64,000 bases of DNA, taken from positions 62,001 through 126,000 of the IMG/VR virus record IMGVR_UViG_3300048438_000153, one strand, 5' to 3'. Below, in pieces: positions 6,691-51,954 of the stretch. A model generated the notes under the pieces. It ran no database searches and was not told the DNA's origin. It saw only the letters and a list, made by a program, of their open reading frames with translations. A program made the translations under genes and the position numbers. Position 1 is the first letter of the stretch; every line of letters starts with the position of its first letter.

Positions 6691-6740
6691 ATCTCACACT
6701 CTCTTTCTGAATAATGACTCACGAAAGAGAGTGTGAGATA
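6690..6740 (-). promoter_or_regulatory. perfect 18-bp inverted repeat covering the RBS and start of the gp25-like gene
   Basis: tatctcacactctctttc (6690-6707) is the reverse complement of gaaagagagtgtgagata (6723-6740). Confidence 0.8.
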
Positions 6741-6754
6741 AAGCATTTATTCTC

Positions 6755-9700
6755 TTAGATATCCTCTACTTCTTTTTCAAAGTCAGCGCGAACCATTGCT
6801 TCGATCTGCTCTTCGCTCATCTTATATATCTCAGCCAAGCTCTCAACCGTGTTAGGGTTAATACCCACTTCAACAATCTCACTATCGCCAACCACATCGG
6901 AGGCGAGGAACATAAGAAGGTTCAGGTCTGCGAGCAGACCCTTGAAGTTATTCAGAGTGTTTTTGTAAAGGGAGAAGGTAATCGAGTTAGTGCCTCCGAG
7001 AAGACCTTGCCATTGTTTACCATCTTCAATCTTCTCTACAAGCGTATCGAGATTTCCTGAAAGATAGTTCATACCCTTGCCTAGAGCTTGAGTAAGGACT
7101 AAAGAAGATTCTTCTTCATTTAAAATAGCCAGACCTTGAGGTGTAGAGTCATACCCCTTTCGGAAATCTTTGTATTCATCGTCAGATTTGATTTCAGGAT
7201 GCACCGCTCCGACAAGGTTTCTGAAGAAACTCTGAAGGTGTACTGAAAAGCCGACATCTGAGAACACATTGGGCTTAGGATAAGAATAAGCTCTACCCTC
7301 TGTATCTACTAGAACAACGCTGTTAGTGTCAGGGTAAGGGGTCTTTAAGAAAGCAAAAAGAAGCCCTCTCTCAAGCTCGTCCTGACTCACAGAAGGGAAA
7401 GACGTAGGGTCTTTCTGAATCAAGTCGGTGATCTTATCAACTTGAGCTTCTCTCGTGTTCTCATACACAGGCAAGAAAGTACGGCTCTCGAAAGGGTACT
7501 TGTTTCTGAGGGCGTTAATCTTACGAATAGCGTTCGCCCTGTTCGCAACTGAAAGATCCTTAACATTAGTTAGGATGTTGGAGTTCTCTCCAAAGAACTC
7601 ACCCACGCCAGTTGCTTCAAGATTAACGACAGCAGAGATACCCGCTTGAACAACCTTGTTGTATGATTCTAAAATGGCTTCTTCTTGCTCTTCAACTGCG
7701 GGCGCATAACGGTAGTTCTTAGAAACACCGCGATCTTGTCGGGCTAGTCTGAGAGCATCTCGAACGTCCTCTTGATACTTCTTTCTAGCCTGACCGCGCT
7801 TTCTTTGAATCTCATGAGTACCTGACTCAATGTCGTCGAGCTCTTCCCTCGCCTCTGCGGTATCTTGACCCTCAAGAGACTCTATACGAGTCTCAAGCTC
7901 TTTTGAGATGCTCTCAAGGTTCGCCTCATGCTCCTCTTTCAACTCTTTCTTAACGCGATCTTCAAAAGTCACGATATTAGAGTGAATGTAAGCGGTACGA
8001 AGCTCCGTGACTTTCTTGAGAAGTTCTTCGCCCTCAACAATCTCAGTAAGCTTACTCTGTGCTTCGGTGGCTTTCTGAACATAGCCATTAGCCATATTCC
8101 TTGAGAAAGAGTCGAAAGCTCTGATCGCGTCAAGATTACCACTGAGGAAATCCCTGATCTCCTTCGACCCTATAGAGATCTCTTCCTCAATCTGCTTTTC
8201 AGACTTAGACATAGCTTCGTCAAAGAAGCTGTTAGAAACCCTCAACTCTTTTGACGCCCCTGTCATGATCGACTTGGCGTTGCGGTTGGTGAGCTTCTTG
8301 CCTTTCTTGTTATCACCCGGAGTCACTTTACCCTTAGCATCAACAGTCACCTCAAAGCCCTTCTTCTTACACACCTTGTCAAAGGTTTCGGCGGAACCTG
8401 AATGCTTGATGATCTCATTTCTGATTGAAGTAAGAATCTTTGAAGTTGTCGGATCAGAGCTCTTTTCTGCGAAAGAAAGAGTTTTCTGCGCGACAAACGT
8501 GTCCCAACCGAGAGATTTAAGAACCTGACGGCTCGTTCGGTCGGCAACTGCTTCGTGTGGGAAGTAGTGAGACCCGATCCTTCTAGCGGGGTCGCCCACG
8601 TTCTCTTTAATTGAGTCTCTGAGAAGTGAGCTGACTGTGCTTCCGAGAGACTCCTTGTAGGTTTCACTGAGGATTTCTTTCTGAGCATCAACCTCAACCA
8701 CAATCTTAGTGAGTAATTTCTTGGCTTCTTTGCCCGCTTGCTTGTCTCCCTCGTCGAACAAGTCGAGGATACTATACGCTTCCTCAATCAACTCCTGATC
8801 TGTTGAACTCACTTGCCCAAGAGTCTCAAAGGCGTAATCGACATCTTCCTGTTTTTTCTTGCCTTTAGAAGTAAGGGTAGAGATCGCTTGCTGAACTCTC
8901 ACAAGATCCCTCAGCTCACTTGTAGACTGATCTACTGCTTGCTTAGCCTCTGTGGTGAGGTTTCTCTGAATGGCGTTTGCAACGCTCAAGTCTCTCGCAC
9001 TTAAGCCTTTCAAACCTGATCCTGTCGCCATACCCGCAATAGCTGTGACAGCATCCACACTCTTAGACCCCTGAACAGGAGTGTAGTCTGAGACACTATA
9101 GCGAGAAAGCGGGTGTCCTGAACTTTCCCCTACAGGTAGGAGAGTCAGCTCACTTCTGCGCTGATTGATCTTATCAATATAAGAGAGCTGACTCTCTATA
9201 TGATCCCTTAGCCCTCCCATATCGCTATCTTCATCAATATCGCCTGAAAAGTCGTACTTGTCAGCGACCTCTTTGATGGCATCTTTAAAGGCTTTGACTA
9301 AACGCTTAGAAGACACATAAAAAGACGCATCTCTTAAGCTGTAAATCTCTGTAGGAGCTGTGTTTAAAACTAGGTACAACTCACCCACAACAGACTCAAT
9401 ATTTTCGAGCTTATCGTAATCACCGTCAATATCATCTTCTACAGGGGCGTTAATCTGAGCACTACGACTCTTGATCAAGCTACGAGACTCTCTCTTAAGG
9501 GTGGCTTCATCATAACCACCGTCAAGGAAAACGAGCTCTCTTGGCTCAAGCTGACCGCGCCTGAAGAGCTTGTCATAGACGATTCCCCTGAGCTTCTTCT
9601 GATTACTCTCTGAGTCAGAAATGAGAGAGAGATTATCAAGTAAGAAACGCAGATCCTCTTTAGTGACCCTATCCGTAGTCACAAGGTCAAGAATAGCGTG

Positions 9701-10750
9701 TGCATAGTCCGACTTCTCTTCCTCAGAAGGACTGCCTTTCTTATAGGTAGCCCTCGCATCCGAAAGAGACTCACGCGCCTCACCTGTGTCTGACTGCGTT
9801 CTTTCTTTATTGACGACATCCACGAGATCAGAGTAAGCCTGACTCACGTTCTCAAGAACAACGTCGAAAGCTTCCTGATTACCGAAGCTCGCAGACTTGT
9901 CTTCTTTAACCGCTCGGTCAATGATGTCGAGCATCGTGTGGTTAACGCGAGAGACTTGGCTAAAAATGAATCGTGACCTGTTTTTCCATGAGAACACGCC
10001 TTTACCAATCTTAGGGTCGTTCTCACCGAGTGCTTCGATCTTCTTCTTTCGGAGAGTAGCTGACCTAAAGAGCTTATAGAAGAGAGTCCCACTCTTTGGG
10101 CCTTTCTTAAGAGATGACCGAGAAAGAAAATCCTCTTCTGAACCAACGTCCTCTGACCGCCCGATTAGCGCCTCTAGAATCTTCTCGACGACGTACTCTC
10201 CGAGAGGGTAACCACCGATGTACTGAGCTTGCTCGTAAAGCATACCGCCCTTACCGACTCTCTGTTTAACGATGCTCGCGACAACCCACTCAATGCTGTA
10301 AGTGACCTCAATCGACCGATCAATAATCTTTCTTAAAAGCTGATCTTTCTGAGCGTCTGCCACACCTGTACCTTGAAAAACCACCTCAGCGAATGAAACA
10401 CCCTCGGGAGTCTTGAGCTTCTTGAGTGCTCGGACAAGTTGAGAGGGCTCAGAAAGAGTCCTGAACCTTCTGAATGCCTGTTGAGAAGGGAAATCCTCAA
10501 CATCAAGACCAAGAGCGTAAATGAGCGCGGTGTTGTGAATCATGAAGCGGAAAGAACCGAGTAACTCGCGCACCGCGAGTCTGTCCTCGCGAGTTACGGC
10601 AATCTTAGAGAAAGAAGAGGCGATCTTCTTTCTGAGTGCCACACCAACTTTAGCATTGATTGATGCCGTCTTGATGTCTGAAGCGGGTCGAGTGCCAATC
10701 TCCTCTAAGGAAAGTATTGAAGGCACGATCTCGTGTGCAGAAAGAAGCAT
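6755..10750 (-). CDS. large hypothetical helical/coiled-coil protein (~1330 aa), probable internal virion protein
   Basis: Long ORF. I placed the start at Met 10750 (GGAGA RBS) rather than 10771. It carries an N-terminal IKTAS...KKIASSF motif. No family recognised. Confidence 0.6.
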   Translation of the reverse strand: MLLSAHEIVPSILSLEEIGTRPASDIKTASINAKVGVALRKKIASSFSKIAVTREDRLAVRELLGSFRFMIHNTALIYALGLDVEDFPSQQAFRRFRTLSEPSQLVRALKKLKTPEGVSFAEVVFQGTGVADAQKDQLLRKIIDRSIEVTYSIEWVVASIVKQRVGKGGMLYEQAQYIGGYPLGEYVVEKILEALIGRSEDVGSEEDFLSRSSLKKGPKSGTLFYKLFRSATLRKKKIEALGENDPKIGKGVFSWKNRSRFIFSQVSRVNHTMLDIIDRAVKEDKSASFGNQEAFDVVLENVSQAYSDLVDVVNKERTQSDTGEARESLSDARATYKKGSPSEEEKSDYAHAILDLVTTDRVTKEDLRFLLDNLSLISDSESNQKKLRGIVYDKLFRRGQLEPRELVFLDGGYDEATLKRESRSLIKSRSAQINAPVEDDIDGDYDKLENIESVVGELYLVLNTAPTEIYSLRDASFYVSSKRLVKAFKDAIKEVADKYDFSGDIDEDSDMGGLRDHIESQLSYIDKINQRRSELTLLPVGESSGHPLSRYSVSDYTPVQGSKSVDAVTAIAGMATGSGLKGLSARDLSVANAIQRNLTTEAKQAVDQSTSELRDLVRVQQAISTLTSKGKKKQEDVDYAFETLGQVSSTDQELIEEAYSILDLFDEGDKQAGKEAKKLLTKIVVEVDAQKEILSETYKESLGSTVSSLLRDSIKENVGDPARRIGSHYFPHEAVADRTSRQVLKSLGWDTFVAQKTLSFAEKSSDPTTSKILTSIRNEIIKHSGSAETFDKVCKKKGFEVTVDAKGKVTPGDNKKGKKLTNRNAKSIMTGASKELRVSNSFFDEAMSKSEKQIEEEISIGSKEIRDFLSGNLDAIRAFDSFSRNMANGYVQKATEAQSKLTEIVEGEELLKKVTELRTAYIHSNIVTFEDRVKKELKEEHEANLESISKELETRIESLEGQDTAEAREELDDIESGTHEIQRKRGQARKKYQEDVRDALRLARQDRGVSKNYRYAPAVEEQEEAILESYNKVVQAGISAVVNLEATGVGEFFGENSNILTNVKDLSVANRANAIRKINALRNKYPFESRTFLPVYENTREAQVDKITDLIQKDPTSFPSVSQDELERGLLFAFLKTPYPDTNSVVLVDTEGRAYSYPKPNVFSDVGFSVHLQSFFRNLVGAVHPEIKSDDEYKDFRKGYDSTPQGLAILNEEESSLVLTQALGKGMNYLSGNLDTLVEKIEDGKQWQGLLGGTNSITFSLYKNTLNNFKGLLADLNLLMFLASDVVGDSEIVEVGINPNTVESLAEIYKMSEEQIEAMVRADFEKEVEDI

Positions 10751-10797
10751 AGTCATCTCCATTAAGGTCATATTTTATATCCTACCCACGTATCAAG

Positions 10798-10809
10798 ATA
10801 AATAATCTA
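10798..10809 (-). promoter_or_regulatory. putative late-promoter element TAGATTATTTAT (representative of a family, consensus about TWNWTNNTYTAT)
   Basis: Similar 12-mers occur 38-57 nt upstream of about 14 starts; see findings. Confidence 0.6.
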
Positions 10810-10919
10810 TTATGGCTTGATCTGTGTCGGATAGTGTAGTACAAGATGGGTGGCTTTGGAGCTGAGGCAATCTCATCACCGCTCCGCTAACATCCCTCCC
10901 TTATGAGGCGTACATATAC

Positions 10920-11885
10920 ATGACAAACACAGTAATGACGACAGTTTGTCGTTCATTCGGCGCTACTTTCTCTGAGCTTGAGAAAGAACTAATGCCCGAA
11001 GTGAGCGAATCTTTTGAGGCTACTTTCATCCAAATTGAGAAAGAACTAATGCCCGAAGTGAGTGGGTCTTTTGAGGCTACTTTTTCTGAGCTTGAGAAAG
11101 AGCTAATACCCAAGTCACCGAAGACCTCTCTTAAGCTCTTGAATACGAGTAGGAGAGAGAGAAAGAGAACCTCTCGTAGAGAAGAGTCAGTAAGCTCTCC
11201 CAACGAGACTGCAAAATACCTCTACGATGTGAAGCACAATCGCTTCATAGAATGGCAAGAAAGAATCGCTAAATACGCGCTACGCAAGCGCCTCGCTTAC
11301 AATGAGCACGACGCAGACGACCTAGCGTCTAGCTTCATGGTGTGGCTCGTTAAGAAAGACAAGTTTCAGGGGCGAACATCTGACCCTATCATGTACCATT
11401 GGGTACGGGGTCAGATGTTCGTTCAGTGGGTGTCTCGACTACGAGAGAAGCAAGGTAAAGATGGTCTCTCTAGACACCGCGATAAGAAAAACCGCACCCA
11501 ACAAGAGAAGAAGGTCGGGGAGTTTAAGATTACATCTCCAAACTACGCATCCACCGCGATCAGCTCGACCGACGAAAGTGGGCGCGTATCGAGTGAAGAT
11601 TGGTACTACGATTCGGATACAGACCCGACCTCTGAGGAGCTTGAGAAGAAAGATATAGACTCTCACATCTGCGAGGCTTTCGCGTCTGTAGCGAACGAGG
11701 AGGCTGACGTAGAGACTCTCTACAATGTGATGCAAGAGATGATGGACAAGAGCTATCGCTCAGACCTAGAATGGGCTGATGCTTGGTCTGTCTCAAAGCA
11801 GAAGGTCAAGTACCTCAAGTCCATCGTCAGGGACAGCCTACGGTCGAACCGCGCTCTCAGAGAGATCGTGTCTCTCAGCATCTAA
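10920..11885 (+). CDS. phage sigma-70/ECF-like sigma factor with N-terminal tandem repeats
   Basis: Region-2-like HDADDLASSFMVWL resembles the DAEDL motif. C-terminal region-4.2-like HTH: DLEWADAWSVSKQKVKYLKSIVRDSLR. Confidence 0.6.
   Translation: MTNTVMTTVCRSFGATFSELEKELMPEVSESFEATFIQIEKELMPEVSGSFEATFSELEKELIPKSPKTSLKLLNTSRRERKRTSRREESVSSPNETAKYLYDVKHNRFIEWQERIAKYALRKRLAYNEHDADDLASSFMVWLVKKDKFQGRTSDPIMYHWVRGQMFVQWVSRLREKQGKDGLSRHRDKKNRTQQEKKVGEFKITSPNYASTAISSTDESGRVSSEDWYYDSDTDPTSEELEKKDIDSHICEAFASVANEEADVETLYNVMQEMMDKSYRSDLEWADAWSVSKQKVKYLKSIVRDSLRSNRALREIVSLSI
10956..11114 (+). repeat. about 3 x 57-bp coding tandem repeat (19 aa: F(E/G)ATF..(L/I)EKEL(M/I)PEVS.S)
   Basis: Units start at 10956, 11013 and 11070. 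Units 1 and 2 share gagaaagaactaatgcccgaagtgag. Confidence 0.9.
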
Positions 11886-12454
11886 GACTTGTTGATCACG
11901 ACCACATCATCTTTAGATGGGTATCTCCTTGCAAGCGAGCGCCACACACGCAGAGCGTGATCTGAAGTGGGGTTCGAGTTACAGTAGTTGGGAATGAACA
12001 AGAAAGGGACTCTCTTAGTGCGTCTCTCAAAGACGTAGTGGGCGAGTCTTAAGTAGCCCTCAAGACCACACTTACGCCCCCTGAAGCCCTCTTCTAAGTA
12101 GGAGTTAATCACTTCCACGACGTATACCTTACCATCAGGATTGAGGAGAGCTGAATGGTCAGAGACAAGCTCAGCCATTTCCTCATAGCAGACGTACTCA
12201 TCTAGCTCATCCATATGGACTAGAGAAACCGTAGCCTCAAAATCGCCTATTAACTTGTCTTCAGAGTATGCCTGTATGACACTCGTCAACGAGTCGGAGT
12301 CTATGTCCCAACCGCTCTCTCTGTGGAAAGAGACTTGAGACTTAGCGACGAGACGGCGCTCTCTCGACATCCTCTCAGGCGTAAGTGAGTAATCTTCAGG
12401 TAGAGTGCCTTTTGCCATCATGTGTCGGCTCGCGACTCGGATCGACATACTCAC
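11882..12454 (-). CDS. GNAT-like fold protein with RVASRH leader
   Basis: FRGRKCG resembles an acetyl-CoA loop. C-terminal TSDHALRVWRSLARRYPS. Paralogue of 15121-15630. Confidence 0.5.
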   Translation of the reverse strand: MSMSIRVASRHMMAKGTLPEDYSLTPERMSRERRLVAKSQVSFHRESGWDIDSDSLTSVIQAYSEDKLIGDFEATVSLVHMDELDEYVCYEEMAELVSDHSALLNPDGKVYVVEVINSYLEEGFRGRKCGLEGYLRLAHYVFERRTKRVPFLFIPNYCNSNPTSDHALRVWRSLARRYPSKDDVVVINKS

Positions 12455-12819
12455 CGCTTGCCTCCGTCGTAGGCAACTGCGTGACCCTCTTGGATCATGA
12501 GGTCATTAAGGGATTGACCTAGCTCAGTCATGTCCTCTTCATAGAGCCACAGGACACCGAGCCACCTCCCGAACTTACCCTTCTTAACAGTGTGGACGAT
12601 GACAGTCTTTCCCTCGATCAATTCCTTAAGAAAGTTTTTTGCCGAGTAGCCTCTTTCTTTCTCTTCGAGGTCTGTTGTTCTGATCTCAGGGGTGTTGATC
12701 CCAACAAGCCTGACTTTGACGCGCGCGAAGTGCTTCATGCCCTGATCAATCATCAAGGTCACAGTGTCTCCGTCATAGACAGAAATGACCTCTGCTTTGT
12801 AGTGATATAAGCTCTTCAT
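12451..12819 (-). CDS. thermonuclease (SNase-like)
   Basis: Motifs VYDGDT, VRLVGINTPE, GKFGRWLG and LNDLMIQEGHA. Start moved to MKSLYHY at 12819. Confidence 0.9.
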   Translation of the reverse strand: MKSLYHYKAEVISVYDGDTVTLMIDQGMKHFARVKVRLVGINTPEIRTTDLEEKERGYSAKNFLKELIEGKTVIVHTVKKGKFGRWLGVLWLYEEDMTELGQSLNDLMIQEGHAVAYDGGKR

Positions 12820-12820
12820 T

Positions 12821-13573
12821 TTATTTCCTTTCGGTATTGTTTCTTGAGTCAAACACACTCGCCATAGCAGAACCTAATATGCCTGTTAGGACGAGTAGCA
12901 CTCGCTCAATCATAGCGAGTGAGTCTTTAGCTTCGTTATTACCTGTAATCCAAGAAGTTATAATGAGGACGCCTAGCATTGTTATCAAGCCTACTGTGCC
13001 AGTGAATATTTGTCTTAAGAGTGTGATCTGACCTGTTATCTTCTTTTCCTGTAGCAAGGACTCTTCCGCTTTCATCTTTGCTTCATCAGACTCTTTTTTT
13101 AATTTCTCAAGCTCTTCAATAACCTTATGGTTCTCCTCGATACTCGACTGTAGTTGCTTCTCTCTTTCGACTTCCGAACTACGATCAACAAATAAAGCTA
13201 CAAAGTATCGTTCTTCAGAGTTCTTGATGTCTGCAACATTTGCAGACAATGAAACCAAAGAGCCGTCTTTTCGGACTGCCTCTAGCTTTCTCCAACTACC
13301 CATAATCCCACTACTACGCACAGACCTACCCGAATCTGAACCTTCCTTATAGGAGTTCACATAAGACCTGTGGTTTGAAGAGATACTTTCGGGCATTAAC
13401 TTGCGTACATCTAAGCCCACCATTTCTAAATGTTGATAGCCGAATAAGTGTGAAGCGGGTGTGTTCGCAAATCTTATTTCAAGATCACCTGATTTATCTT
13501 TAGGGTAATCACAGACTACAATAGCGATTTGTAGTCTGTTCCCCATCATTTCAAGAGTCTCTATAACCTTCAT
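12821..13573 (-). CDS. PAS domain (FixL-like) + coiled coil + two C-terminal TM helices
   Basis: IRFANTPASHLFGYQHLEMVGLDVRKLMPE...NHRSYV...RKDGS is a PAS signature. Two hydrophobic segments lie at the C-terminus. Confidence 0.8.
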   Translation of the reverse strand: MKVIETLEMMGNRLQIAIVVCDYPKDKSGDLEIRFANTPASHLFGYQHLEMVGLDVRKLMPESISSNHRSYVNSYKEGSDSGRSVRSSGIMGSWRKLEAVRKDGSLVSLSANVADIKNSEERYFVALFVDRSSEVEREKQLQSSIEENHKVIEELEKLKKESDEAKMKAEESLLQEKKITGQITLLRQIFTGTVGLITMLGVLIITSWITGNNEAKDSLAMIERVLLVLTGILGSAMASVFDSRNNTERK

Positions 13574-13585
13574 TTCTTACATCCC

Positions 13586-14845
13586 TTAACTAGCGATGAT
13601 GTAAGAGATGTAATAGTCTTGAGCTTGGACTGCATTATTGGTGATGTCCAATACCACAGCAAACTGATTATTAGGTGCGTCTATCTCAGCAACAAGAGGA
13701 AGAGTCGTAATCAAAGTCGTGGCAAGCTGTAGAGCATTATCAAGCTGTAGAGAAACCACGATAGATGAAGTGGCGGTTAAGACTCCGACTACTGGTGGTG
13801 TGATCGTTAGGGTAGTTCCTTGAGCACCGTTAGCTAAGTTGAGAGTCTCTCGACCTTGATAGTTGCGAGTACCTACAACGCCATCTGCGTCTACGGAAAG
13901 AACACCCTCTGCTAGATGTGGGATGATTAGATTACCTCCATCTGCACCATTCGCCCCATTAGGTATCTCAAGAGTAATGTCTCCACTCTGATTCCCGACA
14001 CTATCACCTTGACCTGTGGTTAAATAAAAGTCTCCACCATCACTGTCATTTTCGCTGTCCCCACATTGGATCTCTACTCGACCACCACTCTCTTGATGAC
14101 CTGTACCAAGACGAATGTTGAAGTCTCCACCCTCCCCACCAAACAGACCTCCATTACCTGTGTTGAAATGTACACTCCCCCCTTTCGATCCTTCCTCATC
14201 TTGAGGGTTTGAGTCATACCCCTTACCTGTATAAACTCTGAACTCTCCGCCACTGCCAACATCTGAGTCCACATCACCTATGAGCTTGTACCCCTCTGAG
14301 GTGTAGAAGTACATATCGGCATCATCAGCATCGGGTTCACCCGGTGCAAATTCTTGATTTGTAGGTGCGTGAGAAACAACCCGCAAGGCAGAAGTAGAGT
14401 CATCATAAAAGATGTCAACAAACCCATTATTGATACCACTCTTCCCTTTCAATCTTAACCCTTGGTCATTAGCGTCACCTACCTCATCCTGTCCATCATG
14501 TGGGTCACGATTAAAGAGTTCAGTGCCTTCGACTAAATCTAAAGCCCCCCCTAGCTCACCCTCGTAGGTTACTGCCACATAGCCATTAGCGAGGTAGTAA
14601 GCGATTGACCCACTCTCGATAGATTGTTCCACTCTATCTGTGAGAGCCATAGAGACTGTATTATTTCCACCTGTAGTGAAAGTCAAACTTGAGGGAGGTG
14701 CGAGTGATCTTGTGTACTGACTCTGATCGAGATTATCAGCAAGGTCGTTGAAGTAAAGAGTGTACCCTTCACCTGTAAGTTCGGTGTTTGTACGAGGGTC
14801 GATAGGCCCTCTACCTGTATGTGTTAGTGTGATCTTCCTAGACAT
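13586..14845 (-). CDS. glycine-rich beta-repeat structural protein (fibre/decoration-like)
   Basis: Repeated GG.(F/V).h.TG.G units and acidic composition; preceded by the late-type motif. Confidence 0.5.
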   Translation of the reverse strand: MSRKITLTHTGRGPIDPRTNTELTGEGYTLYFNDLADNLDQSQYTRSLAPPSSLTFTTGGNNTVSMALTDRVEQSIESGSIAYYLANGYVAVTYEGELGGALDLVEGTELFNRDPHDGQDEVGDANDQGLRLKGKSGINNGFVDIFYDDSTSALRVVSHAPTNQEFAPGEPDADDADMYFYTSEGYKLIGDVDSDVGSGGEFRVYTGKGYDSNPQDEEGSKGGSVHFNTGNGGLFGGEGGDFNIRLGTGHQESGGRVEIQCGDSENDSDGGDFYLTTGQGDSVGNQSGDITLEIPNGANGADGGNLIIPHLAEGVLSVDADGVVGTRNYQGRETLNLANGAQGTTLTITPPVVGVLTATSSIVVSLQLDNALQLATTLITTLPLVAEIDAPNNQFAVVLDITNNAVQAQDYYISYIIAS

Positions 14846-15120
14846 CAGTTAAGTCCTATCTTGGGCATGGGATTTCTATAGAAGCTATTGCATAAACGAT
14901 CCATCAATCTTAGACGTTTTATGCCTCCTTGTAAGGTGTTAAGACACTAATAGATAGGAGGCACAAATGGGAGCTAGGGTCATAACTCTAGCAAAGTGCT
15001 CCGCGCCCTGATCAATGCTGATCGCCTCTGCTATTCTCACGAGTATCTTGGAGATGAGTCAAGGATTCTAAAAGAACAAGAAGACAAACTTAAGACTCGT
15101 GCTCTTTCTCCTCTTCTTGA

Positions 15121-15630: not shown

Positions 15631-15641
15631 TTTTTATGTCC

Positions 15642-17252: not shown

Positions 17253-17314
17253 CCTCTGAACTCCTTATATGGTAGTCTTTACAGTGCAGTCGAACACATA
17301 AAAGGAGTACAGAT

Positions 17315-20010: not shown

Positions 20011-20080
20011 CTAACACCCCCCCCCTAAAGAAATGTCTTTTCTGATATAGTTAAAAACAGTTAAGTATAAAGGATCTAAC

Positions 20081-21233: not shown

Positions 21234-21288
21234 GTTCTTTCTCCGTTCAAGGGGCCGTCAATAAAGAAAGATGACTATAAAAGATTAA

Positions 21289-21555: not shown

Positions 21556-21556
21556 C

Positions 21557-21955: not shown

Positions 21956-22029
21956 AAAGTCACTTTCCTTTCTCTGATAGGTTTTCTATCTATCCCCATA
22001 AGAAAATAACCGACTAAGGGGCAGAGATC

Positions 22030-31188: not shown

Positions 31189-31235
31189 ATCTCCTGTCTG
31201 TGTTAATATAGTAAGATACAGGGGATATAGACGAC

Positions 31236-31811
31236 TTATTTAATCTTCTTCTTAGACCGCCACTCTTCCCTCATCTTGGCTTCGATGAGGGGTAGATTCT
31301 GCTCGGCGCGGTGGAGGTCGTGAGCTTTCTTTCTCGCGTTTTGATCAAGTTTCATGTTCCCTAGCACTGTAATCTCACCCGTAGTCTTATCTTGAAGCCT
31401 AGAGGTGAGTCCTGTGGTTTGGGGCATGAGTTGCTTGATCAGGTTAGGGTCGATATTCTTGATGGCGATATCCCACACAAGGTCGATCTCAAGACCCTGC
31501 ATCACCATGAGAGGGTTGCCTCCATACTCGGTGTTCATCTTCTGACGAAAAAGACTGATTCCTGAGCGGGTCTTAAGCTCAAGGTCAAAGAAGTGAACAG
31601 CCATAGGAAAGTTGGGGCGGTCAAAGAACATCTTGAAAGCCACATGGAGATTCTTATCTCCGAAAGAAACGACAGGGTTGTCTACATGACCCCAATCATG
31701 AATCAGAACGTGGATCTCTTTACTCTCAACGAGTCTCGAAATGAACTCCTGTTCTATTTCTGACATAGGCACATAGAGCGCCTTACCTTTACCTCCGAAG
31801 ATGTTGCTCAT
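31236..31811 (-). CDS. hypothetical protein
   Basis: Clean ORF with a GAGGAGAG RBS. Confidence 0.65.
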   Translation of the reverse strand: MSNIFGGKGKALYVPMSEIEQEFISRLVESKEIHVLIHDWGHVDNPVVSFGDKNLHVAFKMFFDRPNFPMAVHFFDLELKTRSGISLFRQKMNTEYGGNPLMVMQGLEIDLVWDIAIKNIDPNLIKQLMPQTTGLTSRLQDKTTGEITVLGNMKLDQNARKKAHDLHRAEQNLPLIEAKMREEWRSKKKIK

Positions 31812-33689: not shown

Positions 33690-33749
33690 GATAGTGGTTC
33701 TCTTTCTTATCGAGGTATTCTAGCTCTCTTTGAGGATAAAGAAAGTATC

Positions 33750-34127: not shown

Positions 34128-34186
34128 CTCTCCTTATTCTGATATGTATCTCCACCTATCACCCTCCCATAAAAGAATAAGGAGAG
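34128..34186. promoter_or_regulatory. 13-bp inverted repeat formed by the RBSs of two divergent genes
   Basis: ctctccttattct (34128-34140) and agaataaggagag (34174-34186). Confidence 0.65.
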
Positions 34187-37959: not shown

Positions 37960-38027
37960 GGTCTGAGCTCCCTTTCTTTGATATGGTTAAGCACACATTA
38001 AAGCCAAGATAAAGAGGATACAGAAAC

Positions 38028-38606: not shown

Positions 38607-38608
38607 AT

Positions 38609-40354: not shown

Positions 40355-40355
40355 T

Positions 40356-41066: not shown

Positions 41067-41069
41067 GAA

Positions 41070-41246: not shown

Positions 41247-41249
41247 AGC

Positions 41250-42401: not shown

Positions 42402-42537
42402 GACTCCTGACCCTGAGCCTAAGTGGACACAAGACAACTTCTTCGGAGTTTAAGAAATGCAGAACCAAATCTTCAATGAGGAGTACTTCAAGATGTCGAA
42501 AGTAAGACTAGAAAACACTCAGGAGTATCTTTTCTAA
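42402..42537 (+). pseudogene. two relics: an orphan MTase tail (PDPEPKWTQDNFFGV*) and an internally deleted MTase mini-ORF at 42457-42537
   Basis: The mini-ORF MQNQIFNEEYFKMSKVRLENTQEYLF* joins an N-terminus like that at 41070 to a beta-MTase-type C-terminal EEY..S..RL helix. Confidence 0.65.
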
Positions 42538-44957: not shown

Positions 44958-44960
44958 GCT

Positions 44961-46184
44961 GTGTTTTTTGAGTACGAGAAAGAACTGCCTAAAACAGATC
45001 TCTCTGACTATAGTCTCCTCAAGAATGGGCAAATCTCTATACCTTCCTATGTATGGCGCGAGATTAAAAACAGCTTCGATAAGAAAGAGGTGATCGAGCA
45101 CATCTCTCAACTTATACAAGATCACAACCTCCCCTACCCGAGTAGGACATACACAAAAGCTGTACTCGACAGGGACTTCAGAAAGCTCAAGAGCGAGTCA
45201 TGTGGTGTGAAAGAGGGATCTTGGGAGTGCTTGAGGACGATCCCTAATGTCACTCTTAAATACCTTAATCGTCAGTGCTACATACAGGCTAGTCAACATG
45301 GTCTAAAAGTCTCGGATCAGCAGACGCATCTCTCTCGCATGAAATGCGCTCACTTCGAGCACAAGAGTCCGTACAGAGAATGGACTCGGCAAGGGTGCAA
45401 GTCGAAGGTCAGATACGTTCTAAGAGTGTTGTGGAGTCTATCAGAAGGAGACGCCCTTAAGAACGGTGTGTGCGAGAAGCAACTGAGAGACTGCTTGAGG
45501 TTGGGCAACTACATGGCGAGTCAGTTCAAGCCCTCATGCGCTAAGACCCTGTATGATTTCTTTCAGGCTAAGAGAGTCTTAGACCTAAGCTCAGGGTGGG
45601 GTGACAGGCTCGTAGGTTTTCTTGCGAGTGGGGCTGAGAGCTATGTCGGGATAGACCCTAACTCTGAACTCCACGAACCCTATCAGAAGATCGCTGACTT
45701 CTGTGACACAGGGAAGGAAACACGATTCATCTGTGATCCCGCAGAGGACGCAGACTTAACGGGTGTTGAGGTGGACTTCGTATTTACGAGCCCCCCTTAC
45801 TTTGACGTTGAAAAGTACAGTGAAGAAGACACTCAGAGTTGGAAACGATATAAGTCGAAAGACCTATGGCTGAATAACTTCTTTCTCCCATCGCTCACTA
45901 AGGCTTGGGAGGCTCTTTCTGAGGGAGGGAGGATAGCCATCAACATCGCAGACAAGGGTCACTCAAGAGAAGATGTGGGCGAGGACATCTGTAGCCCCAT
46001 GTTAAGACATATGGAGTCTCTAGGCGCTACCTATGAGGGGATTATCGGGTATAGGATGAACAAGAGGCCGGGTGACAGAATGGGCGCGGTTGGAGGCGCG
46101 GTTTTCTGTGAGCCGATATGGGTTTGGAGTAAGGGTGAAGCCCCTGATCCCAAGTGGACTCAAGACACCTATTTCGGAGTTTAA
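44961..46184 (+). CDS. DNA amino-methyltransferase, paralogue 3
   Basis: VLDLSSGWGDR and FTSPPYF; GTG start. Confidence 0.85.
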   Translation: MFFEYEKELPKTDLSDYSLLKNGQISIPSYVWREIKNSFDKKEVIEHISQLIQDHNLPYPSRTYTKAVLDRDFRKLKSESCGVKEGSWECLRTIPNVTLKYLNRQCYIQASQHGLKVSDQQTHLSRMKCAHFEHKSPYREWTRQGCKSKVRYVLRVLWSLSEGDALKNGVCEKQLRDCLRLGNYMASQFKPSCAKTLYDFFQAKRVLDLSSGWGDRLVGFLASGAESYVGIDPNSELHEPYQKIADFCDTGKETRFICDPAEDADLTGVEVDFVFTSPPYFDVEKYSEEDTQSWKRYKSKDLWLNNFFLPSLTKAWEALSEGGRIAINIADKGHSREDVGEDICSPMLRHMESLGATYEGIIGYRMNKRPGDRMGAVGGAVFCEPIWVWSKGEAPDPKWTQDTYFGV

Positions 46185-46185
46185 G

Positions 46186-47364
46186 ATGTTTTTCGATTAC
46201 GAAAAAGAGATCACATCTCTCGATGAGATCAAGTATATTAAGAACGGTTATTTCCACATCCTCCCTAGTGAGTGGGAGATGCTTAGAAAGTCTTTTACCA
46301 AGGAAGAAATAAAAGACCATATCGCGCCCATCCTGAGTTCATTACCGTACCCCTATTTCGAGTATTCAGAGAAAGAGCTGAGGAGAGATTTCTCTAAGCT
46401 GAAATCACTCTCGAATAAACTCAAGCAAGGGGAATGGGTAGCTACAAGACAAGCAGCAGAAAGAGACACACTCTTTCTCGGTCAGAGTATCTATATGGAC
46501 TGCTACTACACAGGGAAAGGAATATCTGATCAGTACACTCAAGAGGCGCGCTTTAAATGCTCTTATAGAGCTGTCGGTAACTCCCCTTACGACGAGTGGG
46601 TCAGTGCGGACAAGAAGAACTCTTTCTTAAGATGTTTCTTCGGCATCTCAGAGAGGGACATCTACGAAAGAGGAGGAGTCAACAAGCAGACACTCAGGCG
46701 CGCTCTAAAGATGCACACATACACAGCGAGTCAGTTCAAGGCTGAAGCCTCTAAAACCCTGTATGATTTCTTTCAGGCTAAGAGAGTCTTAGACTTCAGT
46801 GCAGGATGGGGTGACAGGCTCGTGGGTTTCCTCGCTAGCGGAGCAGATAGTTATGTCGGGATAGACCCTAACTCTAAGCTACATGAACCCTATCAGAAGA
46901 TCGTCGATTTCTGTAACACAGGGAAGGAAACACGATTCATCTGTGCTCCCGCAGAGGACGCAGACTTAACAGGTGTTGAGGTGGACTTCGTGTTTACAAG
47001 TCCTCCCTATTTTGACATAGAGAGATACAGTGACGAAGACACTCAGAGTTGGAAACGATACCCTGAAATAGACTCTTGGGTCGAGGGCTTCTTCCTCCCC
47101 ACTCTAAGCAAGTGTTGGAGTGTTCTTTCTGAGGGCGGGAGAATACTTGTCAACATCGCCGATAAGAAGGGCAACGACATCTGTAGCCCCATGTTAAGAC
47201 ATATGGAGTCTCTAGGCGCTACCTATGAGGGTGTTATAGGCTACCGTATGTCAGAAAGAGGAGGGCAAAAGACCACCGTACCGAGCTGTGAGCCGATATG
47301 GGTTTGGTCTAAAGGCGACGCGCCCGAACCTAAGTGGACTCAAGACACCTATTTCGGAGTTTAA
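46186..47364 (+). CDS. DNA amino-methyltransferase, paralogue 4
   Basis: True start MFFDYEKE at 46186; VLDFSAGWGDR and FTSPPYF. Confidence 0.85.
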   Translation: MFFDYEKEITSLDEIKYIKNGYFHILPSEWEMLRKSFTKEEIKDHIAPILSSLPYPYFEYSEKELRRDFSKLKSLSNKLKQGEWVATRQAAERDTLFLGQSIYMDCYYTGKGISDQYTQEARFKCSYRAVGNSPYDEWVSADKKNSFLRCFFGISERDIYERGGVNKQTLRRALKMHTYTASQFKAEASKTLYDFFQAKRVLDFSAGWGDRLVGFLASGADSYVGIDPNSKLHEPYQKIVDFCNTGKETRFICAPAEDADLTGVEVDFVFTSPPYFDIERYSDEDTQSWKRYPEIDSWVEGFFLPTLSKCWSVLSEGGRILVNIADKKGNDICSPMLRHMESLGATYEGVIGYRMSERGGQKTTVPSCEPIWVWSKGDAPEPKWTQDTYFGV

Positions 47365-48354: not shown

Positions 48355-48671
48355 GAAAGACAGCCTCTTCAAAGAGAGTCGCAAAGATGTACTTCTTAGC
48401 GAGCACAAACTTGCCTCTCTTAGAGGAAGCCTTACCAAACACCTTCTCAGAAATCGAGCCCTTTAACCGAGTCTCTTGTAGTCACGACATTATGGAGAGC
48501 CTCAAGGCTGAGAAAGAGTTCAACCAAGAGACTCTCTTAAGGGTCTTGTCTGAGTACACTCAAGTAGATACCAACCTTGTCATGGCTGATGTCTCTCACT
48601 TATTCTCAGACGTGGGAGTAGCTCAGAAAGAAAAGCTCTTATCAGCTCTCACCACAGATAGAGAGCTGTAG
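48351..48671 (+). CDS. hypothetical protein with MRKTAS-RVAKMYF leader
   Basis: Leader motif; ATGA overlap. Confidence 0.6.
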   Translation: MRKTASSKRVAKMYFLASTNLPLLEEALPNTFSEIEPFNRVSCSHDIMESLKAEKEFNQETLLRVLSEYTQVDTNLVMADVSHLFSDVGVAQKEKLLSALTTDREL

Positions 48672-49451
48672 AGTGAGGTAGGTAGAAAGAGAGTTAAGCT
48701 CTTTCACTACCTTGAAGGGGTCGAACTTAAGACGACGATTATCACCTTTAAGTCTAGAAAGAGGCTTTCGGAGTTTTTTCTGAACCTCTTGAGCCATTGA
48801 CTCTTCAAGCTTTGACGTAAGCGCGAAGGCTGACTCAAGATCCTCGATCAAGTCTTGACCAACTTGACCTTGCTCTGCGTCAAGAACAGCCTCTTCAAGT
48901 GCTCTCTTAAGCTTCATAAGAACAGGCTTGCAAGAGATGACTGATTGGTTCGCCCACGAGCCTGCGTGAGACTCTAGACCCACAGGATACTGACCGAGAG
49001 GGAGCTTCCTGTTGTTTGGAGCGCGGTGGTAGTCTCCAAAGGCAGAAATATAACCCTTCTTAACCTTACTTAGCTCAAGGCGTTGAAGCTCGTACTTTGC
49101 ACCCGCGAGGTTCTTGAAGGTATCGCGTCTCTCTTGGAAACGAGGCCCAAGACGACCATACCTCTTGATGAGTGTGTAGCCCCCGACATTCTGAGGGTTC
49201 TGAACGATCAGCATCTCGTAATACTTAGACTGATTCTTCTCGCTATCAATCTTGTAAAGCATGGAGGCTTCCCCCTCCCTTGCTTTCTGACGTGTAAGAC
49301 CCTCAGATTTGAGGTAGGGCTTACCCGCAGCAGTCTTATTGATTTGTTGAGAGGCGCGCTTCGCCATAGCCTGACGAACATAAGCTCTTTTCTCTAGATA
49401 CTCGATGCGGTCTTCAAGGGCTGTCAGATTTTCTGAAGATAACCTATACAT
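48642..49451 (-). CDS. WGR-domain protein
   Basis: KIDSEKNQSKYYEM...LIKRYGRLG...A..EL..L..SKVKKGY. Confidence 0.75.
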   Translation of the reverse strand: MYRLSSENLTALEDRIEYLEKRAYVRQAMAKRASQQINKTAAGKPYLKSEGLTRQKAREGEASMLYKIDSEKNQSKYYEMLIVQNPQNVGGYTLIKRYGRLGPRFQERRDTFKNLAGAKYELQRLELSKVKKGYISAFGDYHRAPNNRKLPLGQYPVGLESHAGSWANQSVISCKPVLMKLKRALEEAVLDAEQGQVGQDLIEDLESAFALTSKLEESMAQEVQKKLRKPLSRLKGDNRRLKFDPFKVVKELNSLSTYLTLQLSICGES

Positions 49452-49508
49452 AGTGTCCTCCTCTTTGGTAAGGAAAATAGATAAACCAAGGAGGAGATAA
49501 AAAACCTA

Positions 49509-51095: not shown

Positions 51096-51112
51096 AGCTT
51101 TAGTTGTCTTTC

Positions 51113-51880
51113 TTAGTGGTTGTTGATGTAGGCAGATGCAACGCGCTCAATCATTGCATACCTCTCTCCGCTTGGGCTCTTCTTATGTTTGGGCTTACGC
51201 GATCTACCCTTTGCCACATCTTTACTTCTGTTGTGGTGCTTACCCTTACCTGATGACCCCACGCCCCCATCAAACATACCCTGAGTGCTCGGGTCGCGGA
51301 ACTTAGGTATGGTGTTAGGGTCTTTTTTCTTTTTCTTCTTAGAAGCCGTCTTAAGACTCGCCATCACCTGACGTCCGTCTTCGGTGATCTCACGATCAAG
51401 CATGACCGCAGGCCGACGAACAAGGTAGTTAGGCCATTTCTCAAACCACTTAGAATAAAACTCGTCTTCCCCTACCTCTCTAACAGTCTTATCCGGGTTC
51501 GGGATGTTCGGGTCAGCGACGTGAACGATGTAGTTACCGCGCTCTCCTGTGACATCAAAGATCAGGCTCGCGTGACTCCAATCACGACCCTCGGGATTCC
51601 ACGCAATTAAGACAGGCTTTCCCTGATCAGTCCATGCTTTCACCTGAGAAAGAGTAGCAGGTGTGGTGAGCGTAGCCCGACACCCAAAGTACTGAGCGCA
51701 AGCTAAGACTTCTTCCCATCGAGCACCCTTCATAGGTTGCGCGCCGATGACCTTGTTTACCTGATCTTCGTTGCAGTCAACACCGAGCGCGTTGAGAGCC
51801 ATACACGTCGAGGTAGAGACACAGCTAAACTGAGATCTCTGTCTGATGGGCTTTACGTTAGCCTTCGCTGTTCTTCTCAT
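51113..51880 (-). CDS. C39-like cysteine peptidase with MRRTA leader
   Basis: RQRSQFSC (Q..C), WSHASL (H), VADPN (D). Start placed at 51880 from the RBS and the TAGATCGTCTAT motif at 51918-51929. Confidence 0.8.
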   Translation of the reverse strand: MRRTAKANVKPIRQRSQFSCVSTSTCMALNALGVDCNEDQVNKVIGAQPMKGARWEEVLACAQYFGCRATLTTPATLSQVKAWTDQGKPVLIAWNPEGRDWSHASLIFDVTGERGNYIVHVADPNIPNPDKTVREVGEDEFYSKWFEKWPNYLVRRPAVMLDREITEDGRQVMASLKTASKKKKKKDPNTIPKFRDPSTQGMFDGGVGSSGKGKHHNRSKDVAKGRSRKPKHKKSPSGERYAMIERVASAYINNH

Positions 51881-51954
51881 GGGAAGCACCTTTCTTAGTC
51901 TTTCCTCTAACCCTCTTATAGACGATCTACCAAGGGACGACATTCTCCGCATAT

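What the first reader, a model, noticed from the sequence alone, without database searches (positions are those of the whole stretch)
6738..51929. Position-conserved promoter-like 12-mer (TWNWTNNTYTAT) before structural and cargo genes
Instances on the coding strand, with distance to ATG: TAAATGCTTTAT 6738-49 (48); TAGATTATTTAT 10798-809 (48); TGGATCGTTTAT 14892-903 (47); TACTCCTTTTAT 17298-309 (46); TAGATCCTTTAT 20067-78 (57); TTAATCTTTTAT 21277-88 (44); TAGGTTTTCTAT 21978-89 on + (41); TTATTTTCTTAT 21998-22009 (43); TAAGTCGTCTAT 31227-38 (39); TACTTTCTTTAT 33736-47 (47); TTATTCTTTTAT 34169-80 (45); TATCCTCTTTAT 38009-20 (50); TAGGTTTTTTAT 49497-508 (46); TAGATCGTCTAT 51918-29 (38). The tight spacing argues for a phage-specific late promoter that is neither sigma70 -35/-10 nor T4 TATAAATA. 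It also supports revised starts at 10750 and 51880.
Basis: partly seen in the sequence, partly recalled or inferred. Interest (0 to 1): 0.65.

Follow-up and report, generated by a model that had tools for sequence, protein, structure and literature searches.

The report
Clade-wide promoter-like motif in marine jumbo phage
A short DNA signal (TA, five variable bases, then TTTAT or TCTAT) sits about 45 bases ahead of some 50-60 genes of an uncultured marine giant phage and its relatives; it is most likely this phage group's own promoter for its particle-building genes, an ordinary kind of signal with a previously undescribed sequence.

Summary
The motif is real. The refined motif is ttRA-TA-Gwyyn-TYTAT-(A/C)T, one roughly 18-bp block with no -35 partner.

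The window lies in a 275-kb seawater phage contig. Genome-wide, TA-N5-TYTAT occurs 46 times wholly inside intergenic DNA, against 6.0±2.6 in dinucleotide shuffles of that DNA. It is 16 times denser there than in genes. It points towards the downstream gene 29:4, and ends 33-57 nt before the start codon.

Two near-complete relatives (PolA about 55% identical) show the same motif, spacing and orientation. So do orthologous baseplate and tail-fibre spacers.

It heads structural operons, while replication genes carry a different motif (TCTGATATR). I found no phage RNA polymerase. The ORF at 10920 is probably a diverged two-domain sigma factor, but its link to the motif is only inferred.

No RNA data exist, so neither the transcription start nor "late" timing is shown. 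The revised starts at 10750 and 51880 are supported.

Verdict: a new member of a known kind, a phage-class-specific compact promoter.

The parts
6738..6749 (-). Motif A site TAAATGCTTTAT, ending 47 nt before the ATG of the baseplate-wedge-like gene 5644-6690. It is followed at once by a 15-bp leader hairpin that buries the ribosome-binding site.
   Evidence: 13.1 bits; 16.7 bits; hairpin -28.7 kcal/mol, z = -6.9; PHROG baseplate wedge. Nearly identical in relative L101. Orthologous spacers in G001 and G002 also carry the motif.
10798..10809 (-). Motif A site TAGATTATTTAT before the 1338-aa gene. It is 48 nt from the revised start at 10750.
   Evidence: 17.0 bits; 18.2 bits. In L101 the block AATAGATTATTTATCTT is identical while its flanks differ, the ortholog starts at the equivalent of 10750, and the ATG at 10771 is not conserved.
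14892..14903 (-). Motif A variant TGGATCGTTTAT (G instead of A at motif position 2) before gene 13586-14845.
   Evidence: 14.1 bits, distance 46.
17298..17309 (-). Motif A site TACTCCTTTTAT before gene 15642-17252, in a divergent 62-nt spacer.
   Evidence: (14.3 bits).
20067..20078 (-). Motif A site TAGATCCTTTAT before gene 17713-20010, in a divergent 70-nt spacer that carries motif B (TCTGATATA) on the other strand.
   Evidence: (14.0 bits).
21277..21288 (-). Motif A variant TTAATCTTTTAT before gene 20394-21233, a member of the MRRTASEI N-terminal family.
   Evidence: 16.5 bits; 14.7 bits.
21978..21989 (+). Motif A site TAGGTTTTCTAT before + strand gene 22030-22518.
   Evidence: 18.4 bits; 16.4 bits. 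In L101 the orthologous site reads TAAGTCTTCTAT: the invariant positions are kept and the N5 bases have changed.
21998..22009 (-). Doubtful instance TTATTTTCTTAT before the protease-like gene 21557-21955. It overlaps the leader of the opposite gene.
   Evidence: It is below the PWM threshold (absent from the lists). The string is conserved in L101, but that may reflect the opposite gene's leader.
31227..31238 (-). Motif A site TAAGTCGTCTAT before gene 30754-31188 (GTG start; an ATG lies 3 nt downstream).
   Evidence: 14.2 bits; 13.9 bits.
33736..33747 (-). Motif A site TACTTTCTTTAT before gene 33363-33689.
   Evidence: 14.0 bits; 16.0 bits.
34169..34180 (-). Weak motif A variant TTATTCTTTTAT before gene 33750-34124, in the divergent spacer shared with PolA, which carries motif B.
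   Evidence: 8.1 bits; below 10 bits.
38009..38020 (-). Motif A site TATCCTCTTTAT before gene 36865-37959 (MRRTASEI family), in a divergent spacer with motif B on the other strand.
   Evidence: (14.8 bits).
49497..49508 (-). Motif A site TAGGTTTTTTAT before gene 48642-49451. This is the best-scoring site in the window, and it has a leader hairpin.
   Evidence: 20.2 bits; 18.4 bits; z = -2.9.
51918..51929 (-). Motif A site TAGATCGTCTAT, 38 nt before the revised start 51880 (MRRTAKA...). It lies inside the longest-ORF extension that runs up to 51952.
   Evidence: (12.7 bits).
11139..11885 (+). Candidate reader of the motif (inference only): a sigma-like protein of 248 aa as called in public collections. 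The longest ORF starts at 10920.
   Evidence: five homologs; language-model neighbours are phage sigma clusters, 0.95-0.96; two helical domains, pLDDT 60.6; Foldseek top 50 almost all sigma factors, E 0.016-0.8; VIA-align Z 6.3-7.6; C-terminal domain aligns with region 4. No Pfam, PHROG or NCBIfam hit.

Best explanation
Motif A, consensus ttRA-TA-Gwyyn-TYTAT-(A/C)T on the coding strand, is the core element of a phage-specific promoter class. It is shared by an uncultured marine clade of jumbo phages whose capsid protein is distantly related to that of Bacillus phage G.

Shown:
- It is one compact block of about 18 bp with no -35 partner.
- It is strongly enriched in intergenic DNA, oriented with the downstream gene, and ends 33-57 nt before the start codon.
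- It often overlaps or directly follows the upstream gene's stop codon.
- It heads the baseplate, tail-fibre, head and packaging operons and a family of genes beginning MRRTASEI. Replication genes carry a different motif (TCTGATATR).

Inferred:
- Transcription starts at, or within about 9 nt after, the TAT, giving leaders of about 25-50 nt. If the base after TAT is +1, the invariant TA falls at -12/-11, the register of a sigma-type -10 element, and TYTAT fills -5 to -1.
- No phage RNA polymerase is detectable, so the host core enzyme is probably redirected to these sites by a phage-encoded specificity factor. The diverged two-domain sigma-like protein at window 11139-11885 is the best candidate. 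This would resemble T4 gp55 or phiEco32 gp36 at their single-element promoters.
- The class is probably 'late', as judged from gene content only.

My sub-probabilities: the motif is a real functional signal, above 0.95; it is a promoter, about 0.75; it is late class, about 0.6; it is read by the 10920/11139 sigma, about 0.35.
For: Statistics in this genome:
- 46 intergenic hits against 6.0±2.6 in shuffles of the same intergenic DNA.
- 16-fold higher density in intergenic than in genic DNA.
- At PWM ≥16 bits, 20 intergenic sites and 1 genic.
- Top hexamers in an unbiased upstream scan.
- Orientation 29:4 and a positional peak at 35-50 nt.

Anatomy:
- The information is confined to -11..+6 relative to the first T of TYTAT, with none from -50 to -12.

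Need for a promoter:
- The motif lies on 13 sides of at least 11 true divergent spacers, which have no co-directional upstream gene.

Gene classes:
- Motif A precedes the baseplate wedge gene, two tail-fibre genes and a 1133-aa gene after portal.
- It also heads the head operon and the operon that holds TerL and portal.
- SNF2 helicase, DnaB and PolA carry motif B instead.

Independent replication in relatives:
- In the near-complete relatives G002 (290 kb) and G001 (376 kb), TTTATA is the top or a top upstream hexamer.
- T(-7) and A(-6) are enriched only in gene-proximal copies, the spacing peak is the same, and the density ratios are 8.4 and 10.3.
- Orientation is 31:7 and 51:10.

Footprints at orthologous spacers:
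- In L101 the invariant bases are kept while the N5 bases change.
- Wedge and fibre orthologs at 44-51% identity keep the motif 40-50 nt upstream.

No phage RNA polymerase:
- PF00562, PF00623 and PF00940 find nothing in six clade records, two of them at least 93% complete.
- No NADFDGD-like or T7 motif-B/C-like strings occur in any ORF.

Sigma-like protein:
-.

Precedent:
- phiEco32 gp36 reads the single element tAATGTAtA, with the start 6-8 bp downstream (PMC8948821).
- T4 gp55 reads TATAAATA at -13 to -6 (PMC1524935).
Against: - There is no RNA evidence of any kind. All 20 runs that hold the stretch are DNA from seawater or marine metagenomes, so neither the start site nor the timing is observed.
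- The motif also precedes a ribonucleotide reductase small-subunit gene, so it is not strictly structural.
- About half of the divergent-spacer sides carry neither motif A nor B, so other promoter types exist.
- The sigma-like protein has both sigma2-like and sigma4-like domains, yet the motif has no -35 element.
- The sigma assignment itself rests on a low-confidence model (pLDDT 60.6) and weak scores (E ≥ 0.016, Z < 8).
- No ortholog of it was found in G001 or G002, which carry the motif. The only sigma-like ORF found in G002 (207 aa, Sigma70_r2 E = 0.004) shows no similarity to it.
- Ten or more large ORFs without any family hit (up to 4204 aa) could hide an unrecognised polymerase.
- In 16 of 31 co-directional cases the TA overlaps or abuts the upstream stop codon. 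That inflates its apparent conservation, although TA remains enriched at sites at least 15 nt from any gene (50% against 18%).
Confidence: 0.7

Rival explanations
1. The motif is a promoter, but for an unrecognised phage-encoded RNA polymerase rather than for host polymerase with a phage sigma. In size and layout it resembles T7-type promoters: about 18 conserved bp ending in an AT-rich melting box just before the start.
For: The conserved block spans about -16 to +2 if the base after TAT is +1. That is comparable to the -17..+6 T7-type layout (PMC4496689, Figure 4 legend). Many giant ORFs (4204, 2884, 1786, 1599 and 1367 aa) have no family hit. The sigma candidate is not conserved detectably across relatives that carry the motif.
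Against: PF00940, PF00562 and PF00623 find nothing in six clade records. No NADFDGD-like or T7 motif-B/C-like strings occur in any ORF. The PF00940 control rang nowhere, so that particular negative is weak.
Confidence: 0.1
2. The motif is the binding site of a phage transcription regulator, an activator or repressor, at fixed position. It is not the element that positions RNA polymerase.
For: TA and TAT lie about 10 bp apart, one helical turn, as expected for duplex recognition on one face of the DNA. The genome encodes several multi-HTH proteins and a protein resembling region 4.
Against: No other conserved element that could serve as the core promoter exists between -50 and the Shine-Dalgarno sequence. 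The site is asymmetric and strictly oriented. Sigma70-like sites are not enriched.
Confidence: 0.1
3. The motif acts in RNA. It would be an AU-rich single-stranded cleavage or entry site (RNase E-like), followed by a protective 5' hairpin, that cuts long polycistronic transcripts into stable gene-sized mRNAs.
For: The motif is U/A-rich. It often lies directly after the upstream stop codon. In 12 of 47 leaders it is followed by a strong hairpin that pairs an anti-Shine-Dalgarno stretch with the Shine-Dalgarno sequence.
Against: It occurs on 13 sides of divergent spacers, where no co-directional upstream transcript is expected. Its invariant, spaced positions (TA-N5-TYTAT) are far more specific than known RNase E preferences (my own knowledge). 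35 of 47 leaders have no significant structure. Motifs A and B divide by gene module, as temporal promoter classes do.
Confidence: 0.05
4. The motif is a compositional artefact of AT-rich spacers and stop codons.
For: Intergenic DNA has lower GC (42% against 47.5%). TAA and TAG stop codons coincide with the TA in 16 of 31 co-directional cases.
Against: 46 hits against 6.0±2.6 in dinucleotide shuffles of the same spacers. Orientation is 29:4. TA is enriched away from stop codons. The result is replicated in two other genomes and at orthologous spacers.
Confidence: 0.01

Closest known systems
phiEco32 gp36-dependent middle/late promoters (tAATGTAtA; PMC8948821)
   Same: Both are a single compact element with no -35 box. 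The phiEco32 element is read by host core polymerase carrying a diverged phage sigma, with the start 6-8 bp downstream, and it lies before middle and late genes.
   Different: The sequence is unrelated: AATGTA[TA]A has one intergenic copy here. gp36 lacks region 4, whereas the candidate sigma here appears to have a region-4-like domain. Function is not shown here.
T4-type late promoters (TATAAATA at -13..-6; gp55/gp33/gp45; PMC1524935)
   Same: Both are short, highly conserved single boxes placed before nearly every late gene or operon. Both serve as markers for late genes across a phage group.
   Different: TATAAATA is essentially absent, with one intergenic copy. Motif A is bipartite (TA-N5-TYTAT) and longer. 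It reads ATAAA only on the opposite strand, which is the wrong orientation (29:4 bias). I did not search for gp55 or gp33 homologs by family.
phiKZ and AR9 non-virion RNA polymerase late promoters (TATG with G as +1; AACA-N6-T-A/G; PMC5312081)
   Same: These are also jumbo-phage short late motifs that end at the start site. Their layout, an upstream short element, a spacer, then TA(T) and the start base, is formally similar.
   Different: No beta or beta' homologs occur in the clade. AACA-N6-T[AG] is not enriched (ratio 1.1). The base after TAT is A or C here and rarely G.
Bacterial sigma70 -35/-10 and extended -10 promoters
   Same: If +1 follows TAT, the invariant T and A fall at -12/-11 and a pyrimidine (mostly T) at -7.
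   Different: There is no -35 element, and sigma70-like sites are not enriched. The strongest conservation lies at -5..-1, where sigma70 promoters are weakly conserved (my own knowledge).

Membership tests
sigma70-type -35/-10 promoter | A -35-like hexamer 16-18 bp upstream of a -10 hexamer | tested here: not met
   Information content is about 0 at every position from -50 to -12 in 38 aligned sites. Only one of the window's motif A sites coincides with a sigma70-like match.
sigma70-type -35/-10 promoter | Enrichment of consensus-like sites over shuffled sequence | tested here: not met
   17 sites against 20.8±5.0 in shuffles for window 6000-25999.
T4-type late promoter | TATAAATA (or [A/T]ATAAATA) box upstream of late genes | tested here: not met
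   1 intergenic copy (3 with the relaxed pattern) in 275 kb.
T4-type late promoter | gp55-type sigma with gp33 co-activator and sliding-clamp dependence | not tested
   I made no family search for gp55 or gp33. A clamp-loader gene exists at genome 240642-241952.
phiEco32 gp36-type single-element promoter | One conserved -10-like element, no -35, before middle and late genes | tested here: met
   Single block spanning -11..+6, before structural operons.
phiEco32 gp36-type single-element promoter | Consensus tAATGTAtA | tested here: not met
   1 intergenic copy.
phiEco32 gp36-type single-element promoter | Initiation by host core polymerase with the phage sigma, start 6-8 bp downstream | not testable with these tools
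   There are no RNA runs; this needs in vitro transcription.
T7-like single-subunit RNA polymerase promoter | The phage encodes a T7-like RNA polymerase | tested here: not met
   PF00940 finds nothing in six clade records, although its control rang nowhere. No motif-B/C-like strings were found.
phiKZ/AR9 non-virion RNA polymerase late promoter | The phage encodes split beta/beta'-like subunits | tested here: not met
   PF00562 and PF00623 find nothing. No xADxDGD motif occurs in any ORF.
sigma70-family protein (the ORF at 10920/11139) | Sequence match to Sigma70 region 2 or region 4 models | tested here: not met
   No Pfam hit at E ≤ 0.5, and no PHROG or NCBIfam hit. A profile search against PDB sequences found nothing.
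sigma70-family protein (the ORF at 10920/11139) | Two helical domains with sigma2 and sigma4 folds | tested here: inconclusive
   The model has two helical domains but mean pLDDT 60.6. Nearly all of the Foldseek top 50 are sigma factors, with E 0.016-0.8 and probability up to 0.97. VIA-align gives Z 6.3-7.6, and the C-terminal domain aligns to region 4 over 80 residues at rmsd 5 Å. Atlas feature neighbours are phage sigma clusters at 0.95-0.96.

The most novel reading that the evidence does not exclude
An uncultured, globally distributed marine jumbo-phage clade may use an undescribed promoter architecture. In it a minimal T(-12)A(-11) is joined to an almost invariant TYTAT occupying -5 to -1. 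The motif is embedded in upstream stop codons and is often followed by leaders that sequester the ribosome-binding site, which would couple transcription initiation to translational control.
Probability: 0.15. Interest if true: 0.7.

Novelty: new member of a known kind. Interest (0 to 1): 0.42.

Why it matters
- The motif gives a ready-made map of transcription units for a clade of uncultured marine jumbo phages in which most genes match no known family.
- It also corrects gene starts, here 10750 and 51880.
- It separates a presumptive structural or late regulon (motif A) from a replication regulon (motif B) and a probable early region (motif C). That assigns a provisional class to dozens of genes of unknown function.
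- It pairs a testable DNA signal with a candidate diverged sigma factor. The two could be tried together in vitro without cultivating the phage.
- The kind of signal, a phage-class-specific compact promoter, is well known. The value is therefore practical rather than conceptual.

Tried and rejected
- RNA evidence. I did not use read laying, because contigs of DNA runs cannot show transcript ends.
- Universal leader hairpin. Only 12 of 47 leaders fold significantly better than shuffles, with a median z of -0.19. The hairpin is therefore not part of the motif.
- An upstream -35 element. None was found.
- Linking the sigma to the motif by co-occurrence.
  - No ortholog was found in G001-G005, Tunturi_5 or phage G.
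  - G002's own sigma-like ORF is unrelated by BLASTP and hhalign, and its neighbour is not homologous either.
- Deeper conservation. The cultured phages nearest by capsid protein are Tunturiibacter phage Tunturi_5 (47% identity) and Bacillus phage G (38%).
  - Neither has the motif: their density ratios are 2.0 and 1.7, and other hexamers dominate.
  - They therefore cannot serve as experimental stand-ins.
- The search for related loci with the wedge protein returned only a near-identical contig.
- Known promoter consensus sequences are absent or not enriched.
- Family scans left most downstream genes and all giant ORFs without annotation.
- The 'moraphage' paper (PMC12619734) concerns a different lineage.
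- I did not run the large representative protein search or complex prediction. The sigma question is secondary, and no binding claim is made.


Full report
**Context.** The window is bases 62001-126000 of a single 275,102-bp IMG/VR viral contig. The contig is linear, CheckV estimates it 88% complete, and its GC content is 47.5%. Near-identical DNA occurs in seawater and marine metagenomes from 19 studies, and none of those runs is RNA. The genome encodes a family-A DNA polymerase, SNF2 and DnaB helicases, baseplate J and wedge proteins, tail fibres, a major head protein, portal and large terminase. Most proteins match no family. By capsid protein the nearest records are an uncultured 485-kb phage (89% identity), Tunturiibacter phage Tunturi_5 (47%) and Bacillus phage G (38%). 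By PolA no cultured relative exists.

**Observation.** All 14 12-mers are at the stated coordinates and strands, and the stated distances to the starts are right. An unbiased hexamer scan of 124 upstream regions genome-wide puts TTTATA (20 observed, 1.4 expected) and CTTTAT (21 observed, 2.9 expected) on top.

Iterative alignment gives 56 sites, with invariant T and near-invariant A at -7/-6 and TYTAT at 0..+4. In 38 high-scoring sites the information is confined to -11..+6, giving the consensus ttRA-TA-Gwyyn-TYTAT-(A/C)T. Nothing is conserved from -50 to -12.

The sites at 14892 and 21277 are acceptable variants, 34169 is weak, and 21998 is unsupported by the matrix.

**Statistics.**
- TA-N5-TYTAT lies wholly within intergenic segments 46 times. 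Dinucleotide-preserving shuffles of those same segments give 6.0±2.6, with a maximum of 15 in 300 shuffles.
- Density is 2.15 per kb per strand in intergenic DNA and 0.13 in genic DNA.
- At PWM ≥16 bits there are 20 intergenic sites and 1 genic site.
- The distance from TAT to the ATG is 33-57 nt, mostly 38-50 nt.
- In spacers between co-directional genes the motif points with the genes 29 times and against them 4 times.
- In 16 of 31 co-directional cases the TA overlaps or directly follows the upstream stop codon. TA is still enriched at sites at least 15 nt from any gene, 50% against 18% in controls. It is therefore part of the motif and not a by-product of stop codons.

**Replication in relatives.**
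- Loci around PolA homologs at about 55% identity show TAATAGTTnnTTTAT-type sites 34-49 nt before genes.
- I fetched two near-complete relatives whole: G002 (290 kb, 93% complete) and G001 (376 kb, 100% complete).
  - TTTATA is the top upstream hexamer in G002 and a top one in G001.
  - T(-7) and A(-6) are enriched only in gene-proximal copies, and the spacing peak is the same.
  - The intergenic/genic density ratios are 8.4 and 10.3, and orientation is 31:7 and 51:10.
- In a closer relative (L101, a 270-kb ENA contig) the orthologous sites keep the invariant bases while the N5 bases change. For example, TAGGTTTTCTAT becomes TAAGTCTTCTAT.
- Orthologs of the baseplate wedge and the Mtd_N-type tail fibre in G001 and G002 (44-51% identity) keep the motif 40-50 nt upstream.
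- The motif is absent from Tunturi_5 and phage G, so it is specific to this clade.

**What it precedes.**
- Motif A heads the wedge and baseplate J operon, the 1338-aa gene, two tail-fibre genes and a 1133-aa gene after portal.
- It also heads the head-protein operon, the long operon containing terminase and portal, and at least 8 members of a gene family with the N-terminus MRRTASEI.
- It is also found before a ribonucleotide reductase small-subunit gene.
- Replication genes (SNF2 helicase, the DnaB operon, PolA) instead carry T[C/T]TGATAT[A/G], with 10 intergenic and 4 genic copies.
- A third signal, a 45-nt repeat around GGTATTGGTGAGGT, lies before small genes at both contig ends, with 7 intergenic copies and 1 genic.
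- Motif A occurs on 13 sides of at least 11 true divergent spacers, where a promoter must exist. In three of those spacers motif B is on the opposite strand.

**Mechanism.** Sigma70-like -35/-10 sites are not enriched (17 against 20.8±5). The known phage consensus sequences are absent or not enriched: T4 late, phiEco32, 7-11, AR9 late and the Bacteroidetes -7 box (consensus sequences from PMC1524935, PMC8948821 and PMC5312081).

No multisubunit or T7-like RNA polymerase family is found in six clade records. No catalytic-motif strings are found either. Host RNA polymerase is therefore the likely enzyme.

The ORF at 10920, called as 248 aa from about 11139 in public collections, has no family hit. 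Three lines of evidence nevertheless point to a sigma factor:
- Its language-model neighbours are phage sigma clusters.
- Its model has two helical domains.
- Its Foldseek and VIA-align matches are almost exclusively sigma factors, with E 0.016-0.8 and Z 6.3-7.6, and the C-terminal domain aligns to region 4.

I rate it a probable diverged sigma, at about 0.7. Its link to motif A is inference only. No ortholog was detectable in G001 or G002, and G002's own weak Sigma70_r2-like ORF is unrelated to it.

If the base after TAT is +1, the invariant TA falls at -12/-11 and TYTAT at -5..-1. If TYTAT instead acts like a -10 box, the start would lie 6-9 nt further downstream, as at phiEco32 promoters. 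Only 5'-end mapping can decide between these.

**Revised starts.** In L101 the ortholog of the 1338-aa gene begins at the equivalent of 10750, and the upstream ATG at 10771 is not conserved. The start at 51880 yields MRRTAKA, matching the MRRTA N-terminus of the family. It has a Shine-Dalgarno sequence and places the motif at 38 nt rather than inside the ORF. Both revisions are supported.

**Rivals.**
- An RNA-processing signal is weakened by the sites in divergent spacers and by the motif's specificity. Strong leader hairpins occur in only 12 of 47 cases.
- A regulator-binding site cannot be excluded, but no other core element exists.
- A hidden phage polymerase cannot be excluded, because many giant ORFs have no annotation.
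- A compositional artefact is excluded.

**Verdict.** The signal is real, oriented, positioned and conserved across the clade. It is most likely a phage-specific promoter for the structural, probably late, regulon. The kind of signal is known and the sequence is new. Neither the transcription start nor the timing is shown.

Noticed in passing
window 20041-20049, 22532-22540, 24201-24209, 34138-34146, 37977-37985 (+ strand); genome-wide list: A second compact upstream motif, T[C/T]TGATAT[A/G], lies 23-45 nt before replication genes (SNF2 helicase, the DnaB operon, PolA). It has 10 intergenic and 4 genic copies. In divergent spacers it sits on the strand opposite motif A. It is conserved in L101, and the G001 clade has CTCATATAAT at the PolA site. 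It is probably the early or middle (host-type?) promoter class.
   Followed up: partly
G000 genome 5765, 6354, 8693, 24194, 266829, 269816, 273399 (outside the window; L001, L002, L011): A repeat of about 45 nt, GTTGAGGTATTGGTGAGGTAACAGGATTGGGTAACTAAGAGTAA, lies 35-75 nt before small genes at both ends of the contig (7 intergenic copies, 1 genic). It may be an early promoter or leader class, and it suggests that the contig ends join into one early region.
   Followed up: partly
window starts 21233, 37959, 51880 (- strand); genome 25198, 133097, 136309, 141638, 142304, 215940 and others: At least 10 genes begin with nearly the same DNA, ATGAGAAGAACAGCTTCAGAAAT (peptide M(M)RRTASEIL..LE.RVA.LE). 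The rest of each protein differs, and most sit behind motif A. The shared N-terminus with L-x-E-type sites recalls capsid-targeting or propeptide sequences of phage internal head proteins (my own analogy, untested).
   Followed up: partly
window 6691-6737 (-), 49452-49496 (-); genome 134805-134842, 143266-143297, 151071-151104, 213993-214029 and others: About a quarter of motif A leaders (12 of 47, z < -2) form a strong hairpin in which a CT-rich 5' arm pairs with the purine-rich Shine-Dalgarno region. The hairpin at 6691-6737 is nearly identical in L101. This may reflect translational control or 5'-end protection.
   Followed up: partly
G000 genome 182994-183872 (L006:16994-17872), compared with G001 and G002: The major head protein is 97% identical between G000, G001 and G002. 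In the same genomes PolA is 54-56% identical, the baseplate proteins 42-47%, and portal and terminase 78-82%. This points to extreme constraint on the capsid gene or to its recent exchange.
   Followed up: no
G000 genome 240167-240703, 239605-240174, 243025-243507, 29440-30243: Further transcription-related candidates: a weak NusG/KOW-like protein (KOW E = 1e-4); a protein with a Sigma70 region-4-like HTH just under the cut-off; and two multi-HTH proteins with Sigma70_r4_2 or HTH_23 hits.
   Followed up: partly
G001-clade loci L014-L019 and L024, for example L015 about 9880-9990, 19918-19986 and 20830-20870: The G001 sub-clade has an additional abundant upstream motif, (T)GTAACCCCTTAT[C/T]TAT(A). 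GTAACC occurs 45 times against 1.9 expected. It shares the TYTAT end with motif A but has a different upstream half.
   Followed up: no
window 39859-39866, 41909-41916, 45680-45687, 46890-46897 (- strand; genome 101859, 103909, 107680, 108890): A repeated string, GATCTTCTGATAGGGTTCGTGGAG, occurs within and around the + strand genes 39161-47364. It suggests a tandem family of paralogous genes in that block.
   Followed up: no
window 12821-13573 (-): A phage gene with a PAS sensory domain (TIGR00229 E = 9e-10, over its cut-off) lies two genes away from the sigma-like ORF.
   Followed up: no
G000 genome 41034-53648 (4204 aa), 9780-18434 (2884 aa), 34946-40306, 162010-166809, 53715-57818: Several giant ORFs have no Pfam or PHROG match at all. 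Their function is unknown. They are relevant to the hidden-polymerase rival explanation.
   Followed up: partly
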